Virus record (IMG/VR): IMGVR_UViG_3300031951_000003
Coordinates: 62,001-126,000 of that record
DNA length: 64,000 nucleotides
Strand: one strand, 5' to 3'
The notes below the pieces were generated by a model, which saw only the letters and a program-made list of their open reading frames with translations, did not search any database and was not told where the DNA came from. Both the position numbers and the translations under genes were made by a program. Shown piece by piece: positions 3,176-63,954 of the stretch (position 1 is the stretch's first letter; each line of letters starts with the position of its first letter).

Positions 3176-4849
3176 TTAGGACTCTTTACGTAACTCTCTG
3201 TTGTAATGTTCGAAACGGTCGTGTTCAGTTGGTGTCATTAGAAGTAAACCAGGATTTAATTTTTCTTCTTTTGTCAGTTGATACATATGACTCATCCACG
3301 TTTGTTCAAATGGATGTGCCCAAGTAACATCCAAAAACATTTTTTTGTTACCTGGTCTTGAAATAATTTGAGGCCAGTTACAATAATATATGTCGCCTGT
3401 CGCATATGGAACTTTTCTGTGTGAAAGAACTTTTTTGAACTCTGTCTTTGGCGCATTCGGGTCCAATCCTATTTGTGGTAATCTTGGATTTAAGGGCCAA
3501 TACTTTGACCTAACATCTTGAGGAACATTATACCAAGACCATTGAGTCCCGTTATCTCCGTAGAATTCAGAATAATTCAATTTTAAGAAATCAAAGTTTT
3601 CCTTTTGCATTATTTGCATCGAGATTGAAAATAGATTTGGTTCGTATCTTGAAAAACCGTTTTTACATTTCGAACCTTCATTCGGATAAAAAAACATGTC
3701 ATCTTCAAAAAACAAATAATAATCCAAATCTGTTTCTTCAAAATGTTCTGCAATCCACTGCCTTCCTCCACAAATACCCAAGTTATCTTTTTTGATATGT
3801 TCAAAATTATATTCATCACAAAGTTGTTTATACTCTTCTGTTGTTGACAAATCACTTGAGTTATCAAGTAAGAATTTTTTTGTTTTAAGTATGAATTCTT
3901 TATCATACATTAACATTGAATTAATCAACGTTTTGAATTGGTTTGGACTATTGAAAGTTATAACATATAGACCAACTTTGTTAATATCCAAATTTGAAAC
4001 TTGTCTATGAACTGATTCTGTTTTTACTTTCAAATCATCGTTCTTCAAATCCTCAAAAAATTTACCTAACAAACCATTTGATTCTATTTCAAAATAATTT
4101 ATTAACTCGGAGTGTCTATAACACATTATGCTGAATAAAGATTCTTCAGTTCCCATATATCCCGAATCCAAGGTTTCTTTCATCAGAGAATAATATATTG
4201 AATTGATTTCTGATATTGAGTGTTTTGGTCCACCGAAGAACCCACCTCTAGCAACCCTCTCAACTTTAGCACCTGCCATAGAGTTCATCTTATCGAAATT
4301 GAACCCGTGGACTTCTGTATTAGCTTCATAAGGAAAACAAACGAAACTGAATTTGGAGATATATTTTACTAATTTATCCAAAACCTTGTCGTGTGTAAAG
4401 TAACCAGGATGCACAGTATTTGTCAACCCACCGTCAATCCAAAACAGATATTCTGAATCAAACCTATCCATTATTTTTGCATCATTCAAAAGATAAACTT
4501 TTGACATAACCAACGGGTTATAGTTTTCCAATCTCGATTGAGTTGAATCTTTTAACCAACCAACTTGATTATACCACTCAGGGTTATTTCTTATGTTTTG
4601 GATTTTATCAAAAAATTCATTATTCCTGAACCAAGACATGTCTCTTACAATAAATTGTGTATTTGACTTATCCCTTTTTGAAAAAACAAATTCCTCTAAA
4701 CTTTTATCACCATAGATAATCATATTGGTATTGACATCCAATAGTTTTTCAAATTTATCCAAATAATGTTGAAAAGGTCTTGACCAACCTTCACTTAAAT
4801 CACCTCTTCCGATGTCCCAAATTCCTGTTACAAGTGTTATATTACTCAT
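3176..4849 (-). CDS. Two-domain glycosyltransferase (WlaTC/HtrL-like N-terminal domain plus GT-A-like C-terminal domain)
   Basis: TLVTGIWDIGR...FWIDGG typical of the HtrL family; second half VGLYVITFNSP...YYLFFEDD carries a DxD-like motif. Confidence 0.7.
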   Translation of the reverse strand: MSNITLVTGIWDIGRGDLSEGWSRPFQHYLDKFEKLLDVNTNMIIYGDKSLEEFVFSKRDKSNTQFIVRDMSWFRNNEFFDKIQNIRNNPEWYNQVGWLKDSTQSRLENYNPLVMSKVYLLNDAKIMDRFDSEYLFWIDGGLTNTVHPGYFTHDKVLDKLVKYISKFSFVCFPYEANTEVHGFNFDKMNSMAGAKVERVARGGFFGGPKHSISEINSIYYSLMKETLDSGYMGTEESLFSIMCYRHSELINYFEIESNGLLGKFFEDLKNDDLKVKTESVHRQVSNLDINKVGLYVITFNSPNQFKTLINSMLMYDKEFILKTKKFLLDNSSDLSTTEEYKQLCDEYNFEHIKKDNLGICGGRQWIAEHFEETDLDYYLFFEDDMFFYPNEGSKCKNGFSRYEPNLFSISMQIMQKENFDFLKLNYSEFYGDNGTQWSWYNVPQDVRSKYWPLNPRLPQIGLDPNAPKTEFKKVLSHRKVPYATGDIYYCNWPQIISRPGNKKMFLDVTWAHPFEQTWMSHMYQLTKEEKLNPGLLLMTPTEHDRFEHYNRELRKES

Positions 4850-56227: not shown

Positions 56228-56971
56228 TCAATCAAGAGACTTAATTTCAATTGAAAGTTCTTTGTCTTTGATTTTCGTTTTTTCATCGAATAATTTTCCA
56301 ATGTGTCCTGACCTTCTCAAAAATTTGAAAACTAAATTTTCATATGAGAATTCACCGTCTTTATTTAAACCTGATTGTCTGTAGTCTTTGAGTTTTTCTT
56401 TCAATTTTTTCAACTCTTCAGTTTTACCTGTTGATTTAGCGTCTTCAACAGCATCGTCAATTTTTTCAGTCCAACATTTGATTTTATTTTTCAAAACTGA
56501 CATATTAAGCTTCAATTCCTTTTTTTCAGGTTTATGAATCCATTCGTCATTCATTATTGAAAATACACCATCACTGTGGTGTTCGTCAGATTCACCCTGC
56601 GCATAGACTTCCACATCATATCCATAAATTTTGATATTGTGTTTGGAATTGAATATTTTCTTTTTTAAGTCAAATAGTTCTACGTAAAGTTCTTTTTCTT
56701 TTCCGTATCTCTCAAAATCTATAATAACGTGTAAATCAAAGTCTGAAAACTCAGACCAATTGTAGTTTGCCAAAGAACCCATTAGAAACACGTCTTCAAC
56801 AAAAACATCATCACCTAAATCATCCACAAATTCTTCAGCAATCTTCATTAACCCTTTTCTGATTTTAGGTTTCAAAGTTGCCTCCTTTGGGTCATTTGGA
56901 TTTTCCCAAATTTTTGGATTCAAAGTATCACGAACCGAAAAACTACTTATAATTTTTTGAAAATTACTCAT
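56228..56971 (-). CDS. Pol-beta superfamily nucleotidyltransferase
   Basis: GSLANYNWSEFSDFDLH (GS...SDxD) plus a downstream YDVEVY. Confidence 0.8.
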   Translation of the reverse strand: MSNFQKIISSFSVRDTLNPKIWENPNDPKEATLKPKIRKGLMKIAEEFVDDLGDDVFVEDVFLMGSLANYNWSEFSDFDLHVIIDFERYGKEKELYVELFDLKKKIFNSKHNIKIYGYDVEVYAQGESDEHHSDGVFSIMNDEWIHKPEKKELKLNMSVLKNKIKCWTEKIDDAVEDAKSTGKTEELKKLKEKLKDYRQSGLNKDGEFSYENLVFKFLRRSGHIGKLFDEKTKIKDKELSIEIKSLD

Positions 56972-58596: not shown

Positions 58597-58669
58597 AATT
58601 TTTAATTTTTGTTTTATAAATTTATTATTTATTTTTGAGTAGTCAACTTTGATACCAAACCACCACAAA

Positions 58670-58794: not shown

Positions 58795-60810
58795 ATGAAT
58801 GATTTAATGGATGACGACGAAAAAATGATGAGCAAGAAACAAAAACAATCATCAGACAGTCCAACCCCTGTGTTGGATAATTTTAGTCGAGACTTAAATA
58901 AGCTCGCAGAACAAGGTAAGTTGGACCCAGTTATAGGTCGCGACAGAGAAATCTTGAGAATTGCACAAATTCTTTCAAGAAGAAAAAAGAACAATCCAAT
59001 TATTATCGGAGAACCAGGTTGTGGTAAAACCGCAATTGTTGAGGGACTGGCAATGAAAATTGTAAGTGGTGATTGTCCCCGTAACTTAGTTGACAAACGT
59101 ATCGTAAACTTAGACCTTACCTCTGTTGTCGCAGGAACAAAATATCGCGGCCAATTTGAGGAAAGAATGAAAGTTATCATCGAAGAACTACAATCCAATC
59201 CGAACGTTGTTGTATTCATTGATGAAGTACACACATTGGTTGGTTCTGGTAACTCGGCGGGGTCTATGGATGGTTCCAATATTTTCAAACCCGCTCTTTC
59301 ACGCGGTGAGATTCAAATTATCGGTGCTACAACCCTCGATGAATTCCGAAAGAATATAGAAAAAGACGGGGCACTAGAGCGTAGATTCCAAAAAGTTGTT
59401 GTTGACCCATCAACAGTTGTTGAAACAATCCAAATTCTCAAAAACATCCGTGAGAAATATGAAAGTTATCACAAGGTTTCATATTCGGATGAGGTCATCG
59501 AATCATGTGTTAAACTTGCAGACCGATACATCACCGACCGTGAATTCCCTGATAAAGCATTCGACATCTTGGATGAAGTAGGTGCAAGAATGCAGACAGA
59601 ACTCAAGGTCCCTGAATCAATCGAAGAATTGAAAAAGAAGGCGGCTGAAATACGTCAGTTAAAAGTTGATGTAGTAAAAAAACAGAACTACGAACAAGCG
59701 GCACAGTTACGCGATAAGGAAAAGAAATTGTTGGACAAATTGGATACTGAGAAGAAGAAATTCGAAGAAGAAATGATTAACAACAAACAACAAATTTCCG
59801 TTGAGGATGTGTATGATGTGGTTTCTTCTATGACCAAAATCCCTGTGAATAAAATGAGTGTTGATGACACTAAAGCTCTTGTCAATTTGGATAAGGAATT
59901 AATAGGTAAAGTCATTGGACAAGACGATGCTGTTAGGAAAATTGCTAAGGCAATCAAAAGAAACAGACTTGGTATCAAAGACCCAAATCGTCCCATCGGT
60001 TCATTTGTTTTCTTGGGTTCGACAGGTGTGGGTAAAACTCACTTAGCTAAACAATTGGCAAAAGAAATGTTTGGAAGTGAAGACTCCCTAATCAGAGTTG
60101 ATATGAGTGAATATCAAGAAAAACATACCGTATCTAAATTAGTAGGTGCTCCTCCAGGTTACGTAGGTTACGAAGAAGGTGGACAGTTGACTGAAAAGGT
60201 AAAAAATAAACCATACTCAGTTATTCTTTTCGACGAAGTTGAAAAGGCGCACAAAGATGTGTTCACAATTCTTCTTCAAATTTTAGATGATGGACATGTA
60301 ACTGACAGCTTAGGTCGTAAAATCAATTTCAAAAATACCTTGATTATTTTGACATCAAACCTCGGTGTAAAGAAATTACAAGATTTTGGAACAGGTATTG
60401 GGTTTGGTTCTAGCACTTATAGTAATGAAGAGGCCAAGAAACAAGTATTGATGAAGGAAATGAAAAATTTCTTCTCTCCTGAGTTTTTGAATCGTATTGA
60501 CGATACAATTGTATTCAACTCTCTTAGTCAAGATGATATTAAAAAAATCACTAAGATTGAACTTGATAAGTTAATCTCACGTCTCAACGAAATGAATTAT
60601 AAAATCACATACGATGAGACCTTGACTGAACATCTCGCAAAAGTTGGATTCGATGAACTATATGGTGCAAGACCTCTCAAACGAGCAATCCAAGATAAAG
60701 TCGAGGATTTGATTTCAGAAGAAGTTTTGACCGACAAATTAGTAGAAGGAAAAAACTATATTGTCAAAGTAGAAGAAGATACTGTTAAGGTTGTTAAGAA
60801 AGGAAGATAA
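58795..60810 (+). CDS. clpC: ClpC-type AAA+ chaperone/protease subunit lacking the N-terminal Clp-repeat domain
   Basis: Two AAA+ modules (GEPGCGKT, GSTGVGKT), UVR-like KKQNYEQAAQLRDKE middle domain, GIGFG ClpP-docking loop; starts directly at TPVLDNFSRDL. Confidence 0.88.
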   Translation: MNDLMDDDEKMMSKKQKQSSDSPTPVLDNFSRDLNKLAEQGKLDPVIGRDREILRIAQILSRRKKNNPIIIGEPGCGKTAIVEGLAMKIVSGDCPRNLVDKRIVNLDLTSVVAGTKYRGQFEERMKVIIEELQSNPNVVVFIDEVHTLVGSGNSAGSMDGSNIFKPALSRGEIQIIGATTLDEFRKNIEKDGALERRFQKVVVDPSTVVETIQILKNIREKYESYHKVSYSDEVIESCVKLADRYITDREFPDKAFDILDEVGARMQTELKVPESIEELKKKAAEIRQLKVDVVKKQNYEQAAQLRDKEKKLLDKLDTEKKKFEEEMINNKQQISVEDVYDVVSSMTKIPVNKMSVDDTKALVNLDKELIGKVIGQDDAVRKIAKAIKRNRLGIKDPNRPIGSFVFLGSTGVGKTHLAKQLAKEMFGSEDSLIRVDMSEYQEKHTVSKLVGAPPGYVGYEEGGQLTEKVKNKPYSVILFDEVEKAHKDVFTILLQILDDGHVTDSLGRKINFKNTLIILTSNLGVKKLQDFGTGIGFGSSTYSNEEAKKQVLMKEMKNFFSPEFLNRIDDTIVFNSLSQDDIKKITKIELDKLISRLNEMNYKITYDETLTEHLAKVGFDELYGARPLKRAIQDKVEDLISEEVLTDKLVEGKNYIVKVEEDTVKVVKKGR

Positions 60811-60813
60811 TAG

Positions 60814-60839
60814 AAAAGGGGGATATTCCCCCTTTTTTT
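60814..60839 (+). terminator. Rho-independent terminator after clpC
   Basis: AAAAGGGGGA-TAT-TCCCCCTTTTTTT. Confidence 0.85.
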
Positions 60840-60851
60840 GTATTTATAAGT

Positions 60852-61460
60852 ATGAGTAATTTTTCAAGATTATTAGGTCAGTTCAAAGAACAGTTTCCTG
60901 ATGAATTTAAATCAAAAGTTGACATTATCGAAAAATTTGTTGTTGATTATATTAATAAAAACAAAATCACAATCAAGTTTTTGAATTCATGTGGAACCGG
61001 TTTCAGTGGGGTAAGAACCAAAGAACAAGTAATCATTTGTTCGCCAATGAACATGAGAACAATTGGTGATTTTCTTTATACCATATTTCACGAAATACGT
61101 CACGAAAAACAAATCCGAGATATTAAGATGGATAATCCCTTAACCGATTATGATTTGGAGGATTTTGAAAAACTATATAATCAATACTGGGAAATGGAAC
61201 TGGATGCAGACCAGTTTGCAAAAAATATGATTGCCAAATTAGTTATTAAATTAGAAATACCCATTTGGTTTGCCAAAGGGCAGTTCAATTTATCACACTA
61301 TATCGAACAATATCCATCGATGTCAAAAAGTGTTCAGATGTCCCTCAGGTCAATTGTAGACACAATTCGACATATAAAAAAATCGGGTGGTGAATTTAAT
61401 GATATTCAAGACCACCCGATGGTTAAAACACATATTGAAAGATTAGAAAACTTTATCTAA
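60852..61460 (+). CDS. Putative zincin metalloprotease-like protein (HExxH)
   Basis: IFHEIRHEKQ and a downstream E-x-DA (EMELDADQFA); TATTTATA at 60841-60848. Confidence 0.55.
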   Translation: MSNFSRLLGQFKEQFPDEFKSKVDIIEKFVVDYINKNKITIKFLNSCGTGFSGVRTKEQVIICSPMNMRTIGDFLYTIFHEIRHEKQIRDIKMDNPLTDYDLEDFEKLYNQYWEMELDADQFAKNMIAKLVIKLEIPIWFAKGQFNLSHYIEQYPSMSKSVQMSLRSIVDTIRHIKKSGGEFNDIQDHPMVKTHIERLENFI

Positions 61461-62302
61461 ACCTTATAAGGGTTTTGGTTGTAACTATATTCCTTAGCCT
61501 TTTTAAAATGTAGTTTGTACCCAAGTTCTTCAATCATTTTTCTTCCCATATCGATTCCATTGTAAACATCTTCCACAACAACGTATTCATTTTTTGTGTG
61601 GTAATCATAGTACCCTATTGAGAAATTAATACAAGAAAAATCAAACTTTCCTCTCAAGGCATAAACATCTGTATATGGATGGACCATATATTCCATATCC
61701 GTTGGGACCATACCTTCAGTTAGTACTTTGTCACACGCCTTAAAAAAGTCCGTATCTCTATCGAATAGAATTTGACCGAAACATTTTTCAGTAATCATCC
61801 AGTTTTCAGGTGCGTCAAACTGAATTCCATATCCAACATTTTCGAAAAATTCAGGGTCTGCGTTTCTTGAACCGTGACAACCTGTTTCTTCAGAAACGAA
61901 AAACGCTGCTTTCAAATATGGAAGTTCTTTGAGTAATGTAAGACATGCAAACACTCCGCATTTATCATCTCCACCTATACCAGTGGGATTACCTTGGTCG
62001 TTATATGCCTTTAAAGATAATTTGAGTGCTCCTTGAGCATTTGGAAGATTTTCTTCAACAACGTTAATCGTGTCAAGTTTGTGTACAGTGTCTGTGTGAG
62101 ATATTACACAAGGGAAATAAAAACCTTCAGGTAAATCCCCAACCGGTTTCTTTGTTGCATACACATTATTTTTTTCATCGAGATAATATTCGATTTGATT
62201 TTCTTCCAACCATTTGGTTAGATAAAGAACCATTAAATCTTCTTTGTATGTGTGTGTTGGAACACTTAAAACTTCTTTGAGTAACTCTAAACTTTTTGTC
62301 AT
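61457..62302 (-). CDS. M20/M28 family zinc peptidase (likely start MTKSL at 62302)
   Basis: SHTDTVH, GGDDKCG, EETGCHGS and YHT; TATATTTG at 62307-62314 (minus) upstream. Confidence 0.8.
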   Translation of the reverse strand: MTKSLELLKEVLSVPTHTYKEDLMVLYLTKWLEENQIEYYLDEKNNVYATKKPVGDLPEGFYFPCVISHTDTVHKLDTINVVEENLPNAQGALKLSLKAYNDQGNPTGIGGDDKCGVFACLTLLKELPYLKAAFFVSEETGCHGSRNADPEFFENVGYGIQFDAPENWMITEKCFGQILFDRDTDFFKACDKVLTEGMVPTDMEYMVHPYTDVYALRGKFDFSCINFSIGYYDYHTKNEYVVVEDVYNGIDMGRKMIEELGYKLHFKKAKEYSYNQNPYKV

Positions 62303-62322
62303 ACTGCAAATATATGACAAAA

Positions 62323-63369
62323 TTACAATTCAACCAAATTAAATAATTCTGGTTGATAAAGTAATTTGTTGAAACCGTCTTCAGAAATTTTGAATTTATT
62401 TATACCCGACATCCCTTTCTTCTTTTTCAAAGATATGTCAATTTTTTTTGTTTCCCTATCAAAACCATCGATTCTAAAAATTAAATCCGACCCTTTTGGT
62501 ATTTCATACCATATACCGATTTTATGTTTTTTTGTAACCCTATCAATCATATCCATAAAGGTGTTAGAATCACCTGATTCATAATCTTCTTCAATTCTCT
62601 CCAAAATTTTTTCCAACGACCTATTTGCTTCTTTATTAAAACTTTCATTGTCGAATACATCATCATCTTGATATTCAAACCTATCTTCATCCCATCCACC
62701 AATTGTTCTATTGGAATCTTGGAATATAGTTTTCAGTAATTTTTTGATTGACACGTGTGGAACATTATATTGAATGAAATTTGATATTAAATCACCCACA
62801 GTTGTTTTGATTCCATCTCCATGTCTCTGAAAACCAAAATCCCCTAAAAAATTATTCAATTCCGAATTTACATGTTCAGATGCAACGTGTCTTATTTCAA
62901 TATTTTTTTCGTGGGTCCAATCAATCACTATTGAGCCAATCTCTCGGGGATAATACTTTTCTAAAAACACTGCAAAACCAGCTCTGTCTTCTTCATCCTC
63001 GTAGTCAAATTTTTTACTATATATAAGTTTGGATATTCTTTGTAAAAGTTCTTTATTATCTGAATCGAAATTGTACCAAGGACCATACCCGTCTAAAAAA
63101 TCTTGTTCGGATGCACTTGAATCTTGAATATCGTAAGTATTGTACGGATTGTTAATTGCCTGTTCGAACCAAATATCATCATCATCCAAACCAATAATTT
63201 TTCCAAACTCATTCATGTCTGTGAATTCTATAATAACTTTTGACAAAGCAGGATTTTCCCTACTCGCAATAACTCTTCCAATGGACTTATCCGCCCCTTC
63301 CAATTCATACTGATTAATTTTTCCTTTTACAAATTTTCTTAAAGCAAAAAAACTATCTCCTGGTTCCAT
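62323..63369 (-). CDS. Hypothetical acidic protein (348 aa)
   Basis: TATTTATA at 63374-63381 (minus) upstream. Confidence 0.7.
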   Translation of the reverse strand: MEPGDSFFALRKFVKGKINQYELEGADKSIGRVIASRENPALSKVIIEFTDMNEFGKIIGLDDDDIWFEQAINNPYNTYDIQDSSASEQDFLDGYGPWYNFDSDNKELLQRISKLIYSKKFDYEDEEDRAGFAVFLEKYYPREIGSIVIDWTHEKNIEIRHVASEHVNSELNNFLGDFGFQRHGDGIKTTVGDLISNFIQYNVPHVSIKKLLKTIFQDSNRTIGGWDEDRFEYQDDDVFDNESFNKEANRSLEKILERIEEDYESGDSNTFMDMIDRVTKKHKIGIWYEIPKGSDLIFRIDGFDRETKKIDISLKKKKGMSGINKFKISEDGFNKLLYQPELFNLVEL

Positions 63370-63441
63370 ATCGTATAAATAGACTTTTAATTTGGAAATT
63401 TAATATTTATGTATATCTTTGTTGTGTTCTTTGAAAATATT

Positions 63442-63834
63442 GGGGAAGTCATGGCAATTGATTGGCGTGTGTAGTTATAGGTGGCACGTAGGAGCTGAGT
63501 TAACTCCTTTATCAACTGATTTGAAAAAACAAATGGCAATACTTTTGCTAAGATGGCTGCTATCGGTTTAATCGCTGAAGAAGCTACTGTTGTTGCTTAA
63601 TTTAAGTCACGACACTCGGGTCGGTTAGGACATTAACCTAGGAACAGAAGTCCAATATACGGGTCACAGGTCAGAGCTCGTTTAAAATAATTCTGAGACC
63701 AAGTTGTTTGTAGGTGGGTTTCTCACATATATCAAACCTAATATTTCGGAACATTGAGAAACAATGTTGTAATAAACGTGTAGTCACTTATAGTTGTCGC
63801 GAACAAGACACGGGTTCGACTCCCGTCTTCTCCA
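63442..63834 (+). ncRNA. ssrA: tmRNA (phage-encoded)
   Basis: 5' GGGGAAG pairs with 3' CTTCTCC-A including the G3:U alanine identity pair; T-arm ACGGG-TTCGACT-CCCGT; internal tag ORF 63535-63600. CCA is not encoded (ends CCACAG). Confidence 0.92.
63535..63600 (+). other. Predicted tmRNA tag reading frame (A)GNTFAKMAAIGLIAEEATVVA*
   Basis: Resume codon GGC after AAAT, by analogy to Gly-starting Bacteroidota tags; Ala-rich frame ending in TAA. Confidence 0.7.
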
Positions 63835-63843
63835 CAGCAGATT

Positions 63844-63870
63844 AACCCCGAGAAACTCTCGGGGTTTTTT
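63844..63870 (+). terminator. Rho-independent terminator after the tmRNA
   Basis: AACCCCGAGA-AAC-TCTCGGGGTTTTTT. Confidence 0.9.
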
Positions 63871-63954
63871 ATTTGACTTGTTAAAGATTTATTAATATTA
63901 TTTAGACGACTTTGGAAATTAAGACCATACTTATTTTAGTCGGAGAGCAATTTT

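What the first reader, a model, noticed from the sequence alone, without database searches (positions are those of the whole stretch)
63442..63834. Phage tmRNA with a long, non-canonical degradation tag
Seen: an intact alanine-acceptor tRNA-like domain and a predicted tag (A)GNTFAKMAAIGLIAEEATVVA of 21 encoded residues, ending VVA with internal acidic EE. Known: Bacteroidota tags are short (about GENNYALAA) and end LAA for ClpXP recognition; phage tmRNAs have been reported before. Inference: the phage rescues ribosomes stalled by host RNases or abortive-infection toxins while changing the fate of tagged proteins, either sparing them or routing them to another protease. No smpB is in the window, so host SmpB would be used.
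Basis: partly seen in the sequence, partly recalled or inferred. Interest (0 to 1): 0.7.

Follow-up and report, generated by a model that had tools for sequence, protein, structure and literature searches.

The report
Jumbo-phage tmRNA with conserved 21-residue tag
A 321-kb T4-like phage that probably infects Bacteroidota carries its own expressed ribosome-rescue RNA (tmRNA), and its peptide tag is twice the usual length, conserved across at least 82 related phage tmRNAs, and unlike the short tags of the likely hosts.

Summary
Window 63442-63835 (+) is a full-length tmRNA: ARAGORN finds it, and Rfam RF00023 scores 76 bits against a cut-off of 47. It has a G3:U70 acceptor stem, a T arm, a covarying helix 2 and a helix 5 that holds the stop codon.

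- The Rfam alignment puts the resume codon there.
- The frame-setting A at -4 is invariant in 82 of 82 relatives.
- All 82 distinct relatives keep an open 20-22 codon frame.
- Codons 1-13 carry excess synonymous change (p = 8e-9).

The gene has a Bacteroidota-type promoter and an intrinsic terminator. Contigs from four lake metatranscriptomes lie only inside it.

The host genome is a complete 321-kb T4-like phage without smpB. It carries a ClpP and, 2.6 kb upstream of the tmRNA, a ClpA/ClpC-type unfoldase; this gene order is kept in 43 of 54 related loci. Of 71 Bacteroidota tmRNAs, 69 have 8-10-residue tags ending [LM]AA.

What reads the tag is not shown. Phage tmRNAs and long tags are both known, so this is a new variant of a known kind, of moderate interest.

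The parts
63391..63421 (+). Bacteroidota-type promoter: -33 TTTG (63391-63394), a 19-nt spacer, then -7 TAtcTTTG (63414-63421). It ends 20 nt before the mature 5' end.
   Evidence: Read from the sequence and matched by pattern (13 matches in the window against 4.5 +/- 2.3 in shuffles). TAnnTTTG lies within 90 nt upstream in 68 of 77 distinct relatives, most often at -27 or -28 (37 occurrences). That this is the Bacteroidota sigma-A consensus rests on my own knowledge.
63442..63835 (+). tmRNA gene (ssrA), standard one-piece form. CCA is not encoded here: the discriminator A at 63834 is followed by CAG.
   Evidence: ARAGORN. Rfam RF00023 at 76.4 bits over the full model. Helix 2 and the T arm covary across 82 relatives. 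G3:U70 is present in 73 of 73 relatives with both letters. Metatranscriptome contigs lie only inside 63454-63827.
63530..63534 (+). Frame-setting upstream context C-A-A-A-T, with A at -4 (63531).
   Evidence: A at -4 in 82 of 82 relatives, pyrimidine at -5 in 81 of 82, purine at -3 in 80 of 82. This matches the E. coli U85-A86 rule (PMC2481249).
63535..63600 (+). Tag reading frame: resume codon GGC, 21 codons (GNTFAKMAAIGLIAEEATVVA), stop TAA at 63598-63600.
   Evidence: The Rfam alignment puts the consensus resume codon on GGC 63535. The frame is open for 20-22 codons in 82 of 82 relatives. Codon-position entropy is 0.79/0.65/1.19. Codons 1-13 show 62 synonymous against 73 non-synonymous differences, where 23% synonymous is expected; p = 8e-9.
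63588..63614 (+). Helix 5 hairpin holding the last three codons and the stop codon.
   Evidence: Single-sequence folds of the 28 relatives printed give the same hairpin, with compensatory changes in the 3' strand.
63844..63874 (+). Intrinsic terminator: a 10-pair stem (63844-63866) followed by a T-rich tail.
   Evidence: 2 found, 0.2 expected in shuffles.
58795..60810 (+). ClpA/ClpC-type double-ring AAA+ unfoldase, 671 aa. It has no Clp_N domain, a UVR-type middle motif and an IGF loop (GTGIGFGS). It is a candidate reader of the tag; this link is inferred only.
   Evidence: Pfam AAA, AAA_lid_9, UVR, AAA_2 and ClpB_D2-small. PHROG 4871 'ATP-dependent protease'. Sequence. Found upstream of the tmRNA in 43 of 54 related loci with enough flank.
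60852..61460 (+). 202-aa protein with an invariant HEIRH (HExxH) motif, probably a small zinc metallopeptidase. Its link to the tmRNA is unknown.
   Evidence: Alignment A3. Model pLDDT 83. Only weak fold matches (E about 1) to CapP, IrrE/PprI, SprT-type proteases and minigluzincins.
61457..62320 (-). M20-like peptidase, syntenic with the tmRNA.
   Evidence: Pfam Peptidase_M20 at E 1e-4, below the cut-off. PHROG 4191 'peptidase' at 1.6e-31. Present in 68 of 85 related loci with enough flank.
62323..63369 (-). 348-aa protein of unknown function, transcribed divergently from the tmRNA. It evolves fast but keeps its position.
   Evidence: No Pfam or PHROG match. Model pLDDT 87 with no credible fold match. 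Present in 60 of 85 related loci.

Best explanation
This is a working, phage-encoded tmRNA.

Shown:
- The gene is a separate unit with a host-type (Bacteroidota) promoter and its own terminator.
- Its RNA is found in lake metatranscriptomes.
- It has every part of a standard tmRNA.
- Its tag frame is 21 codons long, and the whole length is under selection on the peptide.

Inferred:
- Host RNase P and the host CCA-adding enzyme mature it.
- Host AlaRS charges it through G3:U70.
- Host SmpB and EF-Tu deliver it to ribosomes stalled on broken mRNAs. Such mRNAs should be plentiful while a T4-like phage destroys host transcripts and while host nucleases attack phage ones.
- The ribosome resumes at GGC 63535 and adds Ala plus GNTFAKMAAIGLIAEEATVVA.

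Most likely role of the tag (inferred): a two-part degradation signal.
- The C-terminal V-x-Ala-COOH end enters an AAA+ protease.
- The conserved upstream block (K-M-x-x-x-G-L-[ILV], then acidic residues) is a docking site that sets which protease or adaptor takes the protein.
- The phage's own ClpC-type unfoldase plus ClpP is the leading candidate. Host ClpXP or another host protease is the alternative.

The confidence given (0.6) is for the whole statement up to 'degradation signal'. The part 'working tmRNA with the 21-residue tag' alone I put at about 0.9, and 'read by phage ClpC-ClpP' at about 0.22.
For: Identity as a tmRNA:
- ARAGORN and Rfam detect it, and the sequence shows the tRNA-like domain.
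- Helix 2 has up to 6 pair types per position.
- Acceptor positions 5-7 covary, and G3:U70 is present in 73 of 73.
- Helix 5 shows compensatory changes.

Long tag:
- The Rfam resume position falls on GGC 63535.
- A at -4 is present in 82 of 82 relatives, and this base sets the frame (PMC2481249).
- The frame is open for 20-22 codons in 82 of 82 relatives. Resume codons are GGC 68, GGA 8, GAC 5, GCA 1; stops are TAA 79, TGA 2, TAG 1.
- The third codon position is the most variable.
- Codons 1-13 carry excess synonymous change, p = 8e-9.
- M7, G11, L12, E15, V19 and A21 are near-invariant.

Expression:
- Contigs from four lake RNA runs lie only between 63454 and 63827, with nothing on either flank.
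- One 171-nt contig is identical to the window over the whole tag frame.

Dependence on the host:
- No SmpB in this genome or in 3 other near-complete genomes of the clade.
- No CCA enzyme and no RF/ArfB.

Bacteroidota host:
- The promoter motif.
- Shine-Dalgarno-like sites ahead of only 12 of 267 ORFs.
- Gly resume codon and a GNT/GET start, as in Bacteroidota tags such as GNTSYALAA.
- A family member sits on a 7.4-kb contig of a Flavobacterium MAG that also has its own tmRNA with tag GEGNYALAA.

Protease link:
- A ClpP with the Ser-His-Asp triad.
- A ClpC-type ATPase with an IGF loop.
- The order ClpC, M20-like, p348, tmRNA is kept in 43 of 54 loci, down to 64% ClpC identity.
- ClpC and ClpP are each present once in 3 of 3 other near-complete genomes.
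Against: - No experiment or structure links the tag to any protease.
- The gene order may simply reflect common descent of one phage lineage.
- The sub-family with ATS-type tags has no ClpC within 6.5 kb upstream (0 of 5). One 54%-complete genome of that sub-family shows neither ClpC nor ClpP. A long tag therefore does not need the phage Clp genes nearby.
- The penultimate residue varies (V, A, G, E, K, T, L). This argues against canonical ClpX recognition but does not point to ClpC.
- Part of the conservation of the last codons is explained by helix 5 pairing.
- Host identity is inferred, not shown.
- Metatranscriptome contigs show presence, not charging or tagging.
- Pseudoknot 1: the outer pairs of stem 1 covary, but stem 2 is unclear in my alignment.
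Confidence: 0.6

Rival explanations
1. The true tag is ARAGORN's short AEEATVVA. Translation would resume at GCT 63574, and the upstream 13 codons would be untranslated spacer.
For: This is ARAGORN's call for this sequence and for several relatives. The window has T-A-A-T-C before GCT, which fits the resume consensus. Eight residues ending in V-V-A look like an ordinary tag.
Against: - At that site -4 is A in only 49 of 82 relatives.
- Codons 1-13 show purifying selection on the peptide, p = 8e-9.
- The frame from GGC is never interrupted in 82 relatives.
- The Rfam alignment places the resume codon at 63535, 12 nt after pseudoknot 1.
- ARAGORN itself calls the long tag in most relatives.
Confidence: 0.04
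2. The tag is a degradation signal read by host machinery only: host ClpXP through the V-x-A end, or host Lon, FtsH or Tsp through the hydrophobic stretch. The phage Clp genes would serve other purposes.
For: - The terminal Ala is invariant and a hydrophobic residue sits at -2, as in bacterial tags.
- From memory, alpha-proteobacterial tags end AEEFAVAA and are ClpXP substrates, close to AEEAVVAA in some relatives.
- The ATS-type sub-family lacks a nearby ClpC.
- The Bacteroides control genome has ClpP, Clp ATPases and Lon.
Against: - The penultimate position takes K, E, G and T in natural variants, whereas it is Ala in 69 of the 71 sampled Bacteroidota tags.
- If host ClpXP were the target, the short host-like tag would do. 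The extra conserved 11-13 residues would be unexplained unless a host adaptor binds them, and none is known to me in Bacteroidota.
Confidence: 0.3
3. The tag does not cause degradation. It would spare rescued products, or give them another fate such as aggregation or membrane association, so that the phage gains ribosome recycling without loading the proteases.
For: The end departs from the [LM]AA rule of the likely hosts. The middle of the tag is hydrophobic.
Against: - A tag that only has to avoid recognition needs no conserved sequence and no length. Here 21 positions are constrained, with near-invariant M7, G11, L12, E15, V19 and A21.
- Very short tags exist in nature when degradation is dispensable: 2-residue tags are reported in PMC11915505.
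Confidence: 0.12
4. The RNA mainly acts as a decoy. It would soak up host SmpB or compete with the host tmRNA, as reported for the TLD-only tmRNA of mycobacteriophage DS6A, and its tag would be irrelevant.
For: There is precedent: the TLD-only form of DS6A inhibits tmRNA in E. coli (PMC4131195; PMC11915505). The phage has no smpB of its own.
Against: The full mRNA-like domain, the frame-setting A, helix 5 and the peptide-level selection on the frame are all kept. A decoy would not need any of them.
Confidence: 0.04

Closest known systems
Standard one-piece bacterial tmRNA (Rfam RF00023), in particular Bacteroidota tmRNAs with tags such as GENNYALAA, GEGNYALAA and GNTSYALAA
   Same: The tRNA-like domain with G3:U70, helix 2, A at -4, a Gly resume codon, a G-N/E-T start of the tag, the stop codon in helix 5 and a terminal Ala.
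   Different: - The tag is 20-22 residues rather than 8-10.
- The penultimate residue is free instead of Ala.
- Sequence similarity to 71 sampled Bacteroidota tmRNAs is confined to the tRNA-like domain.
- It is not found in 400 further sampled Bacteroidota genomes.
- It is carried by a phage that has no smpB.
Phage-encoded tmRNAs: Bacillus phage G, cluster C mycobacteriophages (Bxz1 group), and huge phages from metagenomes
   Same: These are large phages that carry ssrA together with many tRNAs (PMC4131195; PMC7162821).
   Different: - There is no detectable DNA similarity to any of 50,697 deposited phage genomes.
- Some huge phages also carry SmpB; this clade does not.
- I found no published analysis of tag conservation in a phage tmRNA clade, and none of these tag sequences appears in the searched literature.
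Extended Mycoplasma ssrA tag read by Lon (Gur and Sauer 2008; Ge and Karzai 2009; both known to me only from reference lists seen)
   Same: A tag well over twice the usual length whose extra residues co-evolved with a different protease. This is the best precedent for the idea that tag length marks a change of reader.
   Different: There the organism lacks ClpXP and uses Lon. Here the phage has no Lon but carries a ClpC-type ATPase and ClpP. The link between tag and protease is untested here.
Two-part E. coli and Caulobacter ssrA tags with an SspB adaptor site upstream of the ClpX site (from my own knowledge)
   Same: The proposed logic is the same: a C-terminal entry signal plus an upstream docking block.
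   Different: No SspB-like gene was looked for or identified here. The conserved block (K-M-x-x-x-G-L-I) is unrelated in sequence.

Membership tests
tmRNA (RF00023, standard one-piece form) | Covariance-model score above the curated gathering score over the full model | tested here: met
   76.4 bits against 47, model positions 1-374, E 6.7e-28. The same result was obtained on the whole genome.
tmRNA (RF00023, standard one-piece form) | tRNA-like domain: a 7-bp acceptor stem with G3:U70, a T arm and discriminator A | tested here: met
   Read from the sequence. G3:U70 in 73 of 73 relatives. Acceptor positions 5-7 and the T stem covary.
tmRNA (RF00023, standard one-piece form) | Long helix 2 joining the tRNA-like domain to the pseudoknot ring | tested here: met
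   The RNAalifold consensus on 82 sequences has 24 pairs, many with 3-6 pair types.
tmRNA (RF00023, standard one-piece form) | Pseudoknot 1 just upstream of the resume codon | tested here: inconclusive
   The Rfam alignment places its hairpin at about 63494-63520 with two mismatched pairs. The outer pairs of stem 1 covary (AU/CG; GU/GC/UA/AU), but stem 2 is not resolved in my alignment. Pseudoknots 2-4 were not tested separately.
tmRNA (RF00023, standard one-piece form) | Tag frame with the frame-setting A four bases before the resume codon, and the stop codon in helix 5 | tested here: met
tmRNA (RF00023, standard one-piece form) | Alanylation, SmpB binding and trans-translation activity | not testable with these tools
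   Only presence of the RNA in metatranscriptomes was shown.
ssrA degradation tag read by ClpXP (canonical) | C-terminal [LMV]-A-A-COOH | tested here: not met
   The window ends V-V-A. Across the family the penultimate residue is V 37, A 15, G 6, E 4, K 3, T 2, L 2. Of 71 sampled Bacteroidota tags, 69 end [LM]AA.
ssrA degradation tag read by ClpXP (canonical) | Tagged proteins are degraded | not testable with these tools
   This needs reporter assays.
ClpA/ClpC-type unfoldase that docks on ClpP (window 58795-60810) | Two AAA+ modules plus a ClpP-docking [ILV]-G-[FL] loop before the FxPEFxNR motif | tested here: met
   Pfam AAA and AAA_2. GTGIGFGS...FSPEFLNRID is in the sequence. That this is the docking-loop position rests on my memory of ClpA.
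ClpA/ClpC-type unfoldase that docks on ClpP (window 58795-60810) | N-terminal Clp_N repeat domain (adaptor binding) | tested here: not met
   No Clp_N hit. The PHROG 4871 match starts at profile position 156. Scores fall below the NCBIfam ClpA and ClpB cut-offs.

The most novel reading that the evidence does not exclude
The long tag is a phage-private degradation signal. Its conserved middle block would dock on the N-domain-less phage ClpC (or on a neighbouring phage protein), so that every polypeptide rescued by the phage tmRNA goes to a phage-encoded ClpC-ClpP protease rather than to host ClpXP. That would give a self-contained viral rescue-and-recycle pathway that borrows only SmpB, AlaRS and EF-Tu from the cell.
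Probability: 0.22. Interest if true: 0.8.

Novelty: new variant of a known kind. Interest (0 to 1): 0.55.

Why it matters
tmRNA tags are the textbook example of a degradation signal, and changes in the tag are known to track changes in the protease that reads them.

This clade is large: at least 82 distinct sequences on more than 119 viral contigs, including several complete genomes of about 320 kb. Its tmRNA is expressed in lakes and keeps a tag twice the normal length. The likely host phylum has very uniform short tags.

The tmRNA also sits beside phage genes for an unfoldase and peptidases. That makes one question directly testable with a handful of reporter constructs: does a virus redirect the fate of rescued polypeptides, or only the supply of free ribosomes?

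It also flags a practical point. ARAGORN truncates the tag in part of this family.

Tried and rejected
- blastn of the tmRNA against 50,697 deposited phage genomes gave no match.
- An exact-motif scan of 185,579 species genomes gave 6 hits. Only one is a family member, on a 7.4-kb contig binned in a Flavobacterium MAG; the other five are chance.
- BLAST of the tmRNA against 401 Bacteroidota genomes matched only that same MAG.
- The phage-family HMM against 71 Bacteroidota tmRNAs gave only weak matches over the tRNA-like domain, so no donor lineage can be named.
- The alternative +1 frame (AILLLRWLLSV) was rejected.
- The genome-wide TAnnTTTG count shows only about 1.8-fold enrichment upstream of ORFs, which is weak on its own.
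- p348: no Pfam, PHROG or Atlas lead, and no credible fold match.
- p202: PDB profile search was empty and fold matches are weak, E about 1. The HExxH motif is the only firm feature.
- The outer-membrane barrel protein downstream has no NCBIfam match, so I do not call it SusC.
- No Lon, SmpB, PolyA_pol-type CCA enzyme or RF/ArfB is found in the genome.
- Complex prediction was not used. A substrate tag engages the pore of a hexamer (6 x 671 residues, over the size limit), and a blind test of a neighbour with a 21-residue hydrophobic peptide would not have moved my odds.
- Literature: none of the tag strings appears in the searched full texts or in the supplements of the 2025 tmRNA database paper. 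The Gur and Sauer 2008 paper is not held.

Full report
**What is there.**
ARAGORN finds one tmRNA in the window, at 63442-63835 on the + strand. Rfam's tmRNA model RF00023 matches 63442-63837 over all 374 model positions at 76.4 bits, against a gathering score of 47, with E 6.7e-28. The tRNA-like domain can be read from the sequence:
- Acceptor strands GGGGAAG and CTTCTCC, with the G3:U70 pair that alanyl-tRNA synthetase reads.
- Discriminator A.
- A T arm, ACGGG-TTCGACT-CCCGT.

CCA is not encoded in this copy, though most relatives encode it. The window is bases 62001-126000 of a 321,139-bp virus record with direct terminal repeats, rated complete. That genome has 24 tRNA genes, a T4-type Gp23 capsid protein and a Gp20 portal.

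**Which tag.**
ARAGORN prints AEEATVVA for this sequence. Both lie in the same frame and differ only in where translation resumes. Five results favour the long reading:
1. The Rfam alignment puts the consensus resume codon on GGC 63535, 12 nt after the pseudoknot 1 hairpin.
2. Two motif scans of IMG/VR brought in more than 119 contigs, and an HMM finds the gene in 123 of 124 loci. Among 82 distinct full-length sequences the frame from the aligned resume codon is open for 20-22 codons in every one (21: 69; 20: 8; 22: 5). Resume codons are GGC, GGA, GAC or GCA, and the stop falls at the aligned position. The two shifted frames contain stops in 59 of 69 and 68 of 69 sequences.
3. The base four positions before the resume codon is A in 82 of 82. 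It is preceded by a pyrimidine (81 of 82) and followed by a purine (80 of 82). This is the U85-A86 context that sets the frame in E. coli (PMC2481249). At ARAGORN's short start the same position is A in only 49 of 82.
4. The third codon position is the most variable, with entropies 0.79/0.65/1.19. In 34 independent nearest-neighbour pairs, codons 1-13, the part the short call leaves out, differ synonymously 62 times and non-synonymously 73 times. Only 23% synonymous is expected from random changes; p = 8e-9.
5. ARAGORN itself reports the full-length tag in most relatives.

The alternative frame starting at GCA 63536 gives AILLLRWLLSV in the window and is not kept elsewhere.

**Architecture.**
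- Helix 2 is recovered by RNAalifold with many compensatory pair types, and the T stem covaries.
- Acceptor positions 5-7 covary, and G3:U70 is universal.
- The last three or four codons and the stop codon sit in a hairpin, helix 5. Its 3' strand changes in step with the codons, for example GUUGUU/AACAAC, GUUAAG/CUUAAC and GUUGAG/CUCAAC.
- Only the outer pairs of pseudoknot 1 stem 1 covary clearly.

The RNA is therefore a standard tmRNA whose single-stranded coding stretch is about 11-13 codons longer than usual.

**The tag as a peptide.**
The family profile is G-N-[TV]-[FLY]-[AND]-K-M-[AES]-x-[LI]-G-L-[ILT]-[RA]-E-[EAD]-x-x-V-x-A.
- M7, G11, L12, E15, V19 and A21 are near-invariant.
- The penultimate residue is free (V, A, G, E, K, T, L).

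For comparison, 69 of 71 tmRNAs drawn across the Bacteroidota phylum have 8-10-residue tags ending [LM]AA, such as GENNYALAA, ADDYSYAMAA and GNTSYALAA. The other two are odd ARAGORN calls, DQVDKLNSVP and ANRDYA. The most frequent tag length in the 2025 tmRNA database is 10 residues (PMC11915505).

**Expression.**
Upstream lies TTTG, 19 nt, then TAtcTTTG (63391-63421).
- TAnnTTTG lies within 90 nt upstream in 68 of 77 distinct relatives, most often at -27 or -28.
- The composite motif occurs 13 times in the window against 4.5 expected.
- To my knowledge this is the Bacteroidota primary-sigma promoter consensus.

A 10-pair terminator follows at 63844-63866. In four lake or freshwater metatranscriptome runs, assembled contigs lie only between 63454 and 63827. 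Nothing lies on the 142 nt before the gene or the 113 nt after it. One 171-nt contig is identical to the window across the whole tag frame. The empty flanks argue against carried-over DNA. This shows the RNA is present, not that it is active.

**Host.**
No host is proven. The pointers to Bacteroidota, probably freshwater Flavobacteriia, are:
- The promoter.
- Shine-Dalgarno-like sites before only 12 of 267 ORFs.
- The Gly resume codon and GNT/GET start shared with Bacteroidota tags.
- A downstream gene for a 1091-residue outer-membrane barrel protein with a CarboxypepD_reg N-terminal domain.
- One family member on a short contig binned into a Flavobacterium MAG that has its own tmRNA with tag GEGNYALAA.

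The phage family is not otherwise found in 400 further sampled Bacteroidota genomes. It shares only the tRNA-like domain with their tmRNAs.

**Partners.**
- The genome has no SmpB, no Lon, no PolyA_pol-type CCA enzyme and no RF/ArfB. Three other near-complete genomes of the clade also lack SmpB.
- It does encode a ClpP with the catalytic Ser, His and Asp in place.
- At window 58795-60810 it encodes a two-ring Clp ATPase without the Clp_N domain, with a UVR-type middle motif and an IGF loop at the position where ClpA carries its ClpP-docking loop. That position is from memory.
- Between this gene and the tmRNA lie three genes: a 202-residue protein with an invariant HExxH motif, an M20-like peptidase, and a fast-evolving 348-residue protein of unknown fold.
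- The order ClpC, M20-like, p348, tmRNA is kept in 43 of 54 related loci with enough upstream sequence, down to 64% ClpC identity.
- A sub-family whose tags read ...ATS[KN]VA(V)A lies in another context with no ClpC upstream (0 of 5, against 31 of 32 for the acidic type). This is one split on the tree, so it is not statistical evidence.

**Interpretation.**
Firm points:
- This is a real, complete, expressed phage tmRNA.
- Its tag is 21 encoded residues.
- The whole tag is constrained as a peptide.
- The phage must borrow SmpB.

Inferred points:
- It raises ribosome-rescue capacity during infection.
- The tag is a two-part degradation signal.

The constraint over 21 positions argues against a tag that merely avoids proteases, and against a pure SmpB decoy. 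The free penultimate residue argues against canonical ClpX reading. The neighbouring phage unfoldase and the phage ClpP make a phage-private route attractive but unproven.

I put about 0.9 on 'working tmRNA with the long tag', about 0.6 on 'degradation signal' and about 0.22 on 'read by phage ClpC-ClpP'.

**Comparison and novelty.**
- Phage tmRNAs are known in Bacillus phage G, the Bxz1 group of mycobacteriophages and metagenomic huge phages (PMC4131195; PMC7162821).
- Long tags tied to a change of protease are known in Mycoplasma (titles seen).
- This clade has no relative among deposited phage genomes, and its tag strings do not occur in the searched literature.

It is a new variant of a known kind: moderately interesting, cheap to test, and a reminder that automatic tag calls can be truncated.

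Noticed in passing
window 64060-64000+ (continues beyond the window; L213:61-3336): Directly downstream of the tmRNA the phage encodes a 1091-residue protein with a CarboxypepD_reg N-terminal domain and an outer-membrane beta-barrel domain. This is the build of Bacteroidota SusC/TonB-dependent receptors, but it has no NCBIfam match. An outer-membrane transporter-like gene in a phage is unusual.
   Followed up: partly
window 58795-62320: There is a cluster of proteolysis-type genes beside the tmRNA: a ClpA/ClpC-type ATPase lacking Clp_N, a 202-aa protein with an invariant HEIRH motif, and an M20-like peptidase. A Bacteroidota-type promoter motif lies at 58608-58637, ahead of the ATPase gene.
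   Followed up: partly
genome 147387-148064 (outside the window; L128:1366-2043): A phage ClpP scoring 196 bits with the Ser-His-Asp triad. Three other near-complete genomes of the clade each have one ClpP and one Clp ATPase.
   Followed up: partly
window 63834-63837: This copy of the tmRNA gene does not encode CCA (A-CAG after the acceptor stem), while most relatives encode CCA. The genome has no PolyA_pol-family nucleotidyltransferase.
   Followed up: partly
window 63426-63441 and the same place in related loci: A conserved leader, GTTCTTTGAAA(A)TAT, lies between the -7 box and the mature 5' end in most relatives. It may be the transcription start region or an RNase P context.
   Followed up: no
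L025, L027, L049, L053, L065, L077, L098, L102, L111, L114, L115, L120: A sub-family of the tmRNA has tags such as GNVYNNMEIAGILATSKVAA, with no acidic pair and sometimes 20 residues. It sits in a different gene context without ClpC upstream. L060 and L104 carry a more divergent 21-residue tag, GDIFADATVGHFVTEGAEVVA.
   Followed up: partly
genome 134989-140972 and 161395-161483 (outside the window): There are 24 tRNA genes, 23 of them in one minus-strand block.
   Followed up: no
window 3176-4849 (-): A 557-aa protein with an HtrL_YibB domain (E 1.9e-21), a family of unknown function linked to cell-envelope sugar metabolism.
   Followed up: no
window 56228-56971 (-): A 247-aa protein with a weak nucleotidyltransferase (NTP_transf_2) match and a strong match to PHROG 36119 of unknown function.
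   Followed up: no
L130 / G001:C53: A 7.4-kb contig carrying a family member is binned in a Flavobacterium sp. MAG that also has its own canonical tmRNA (tag GEGNYALAA). This is probably phage DNA co-binned with its host and is only a weak host clue.
   Followed up: yes
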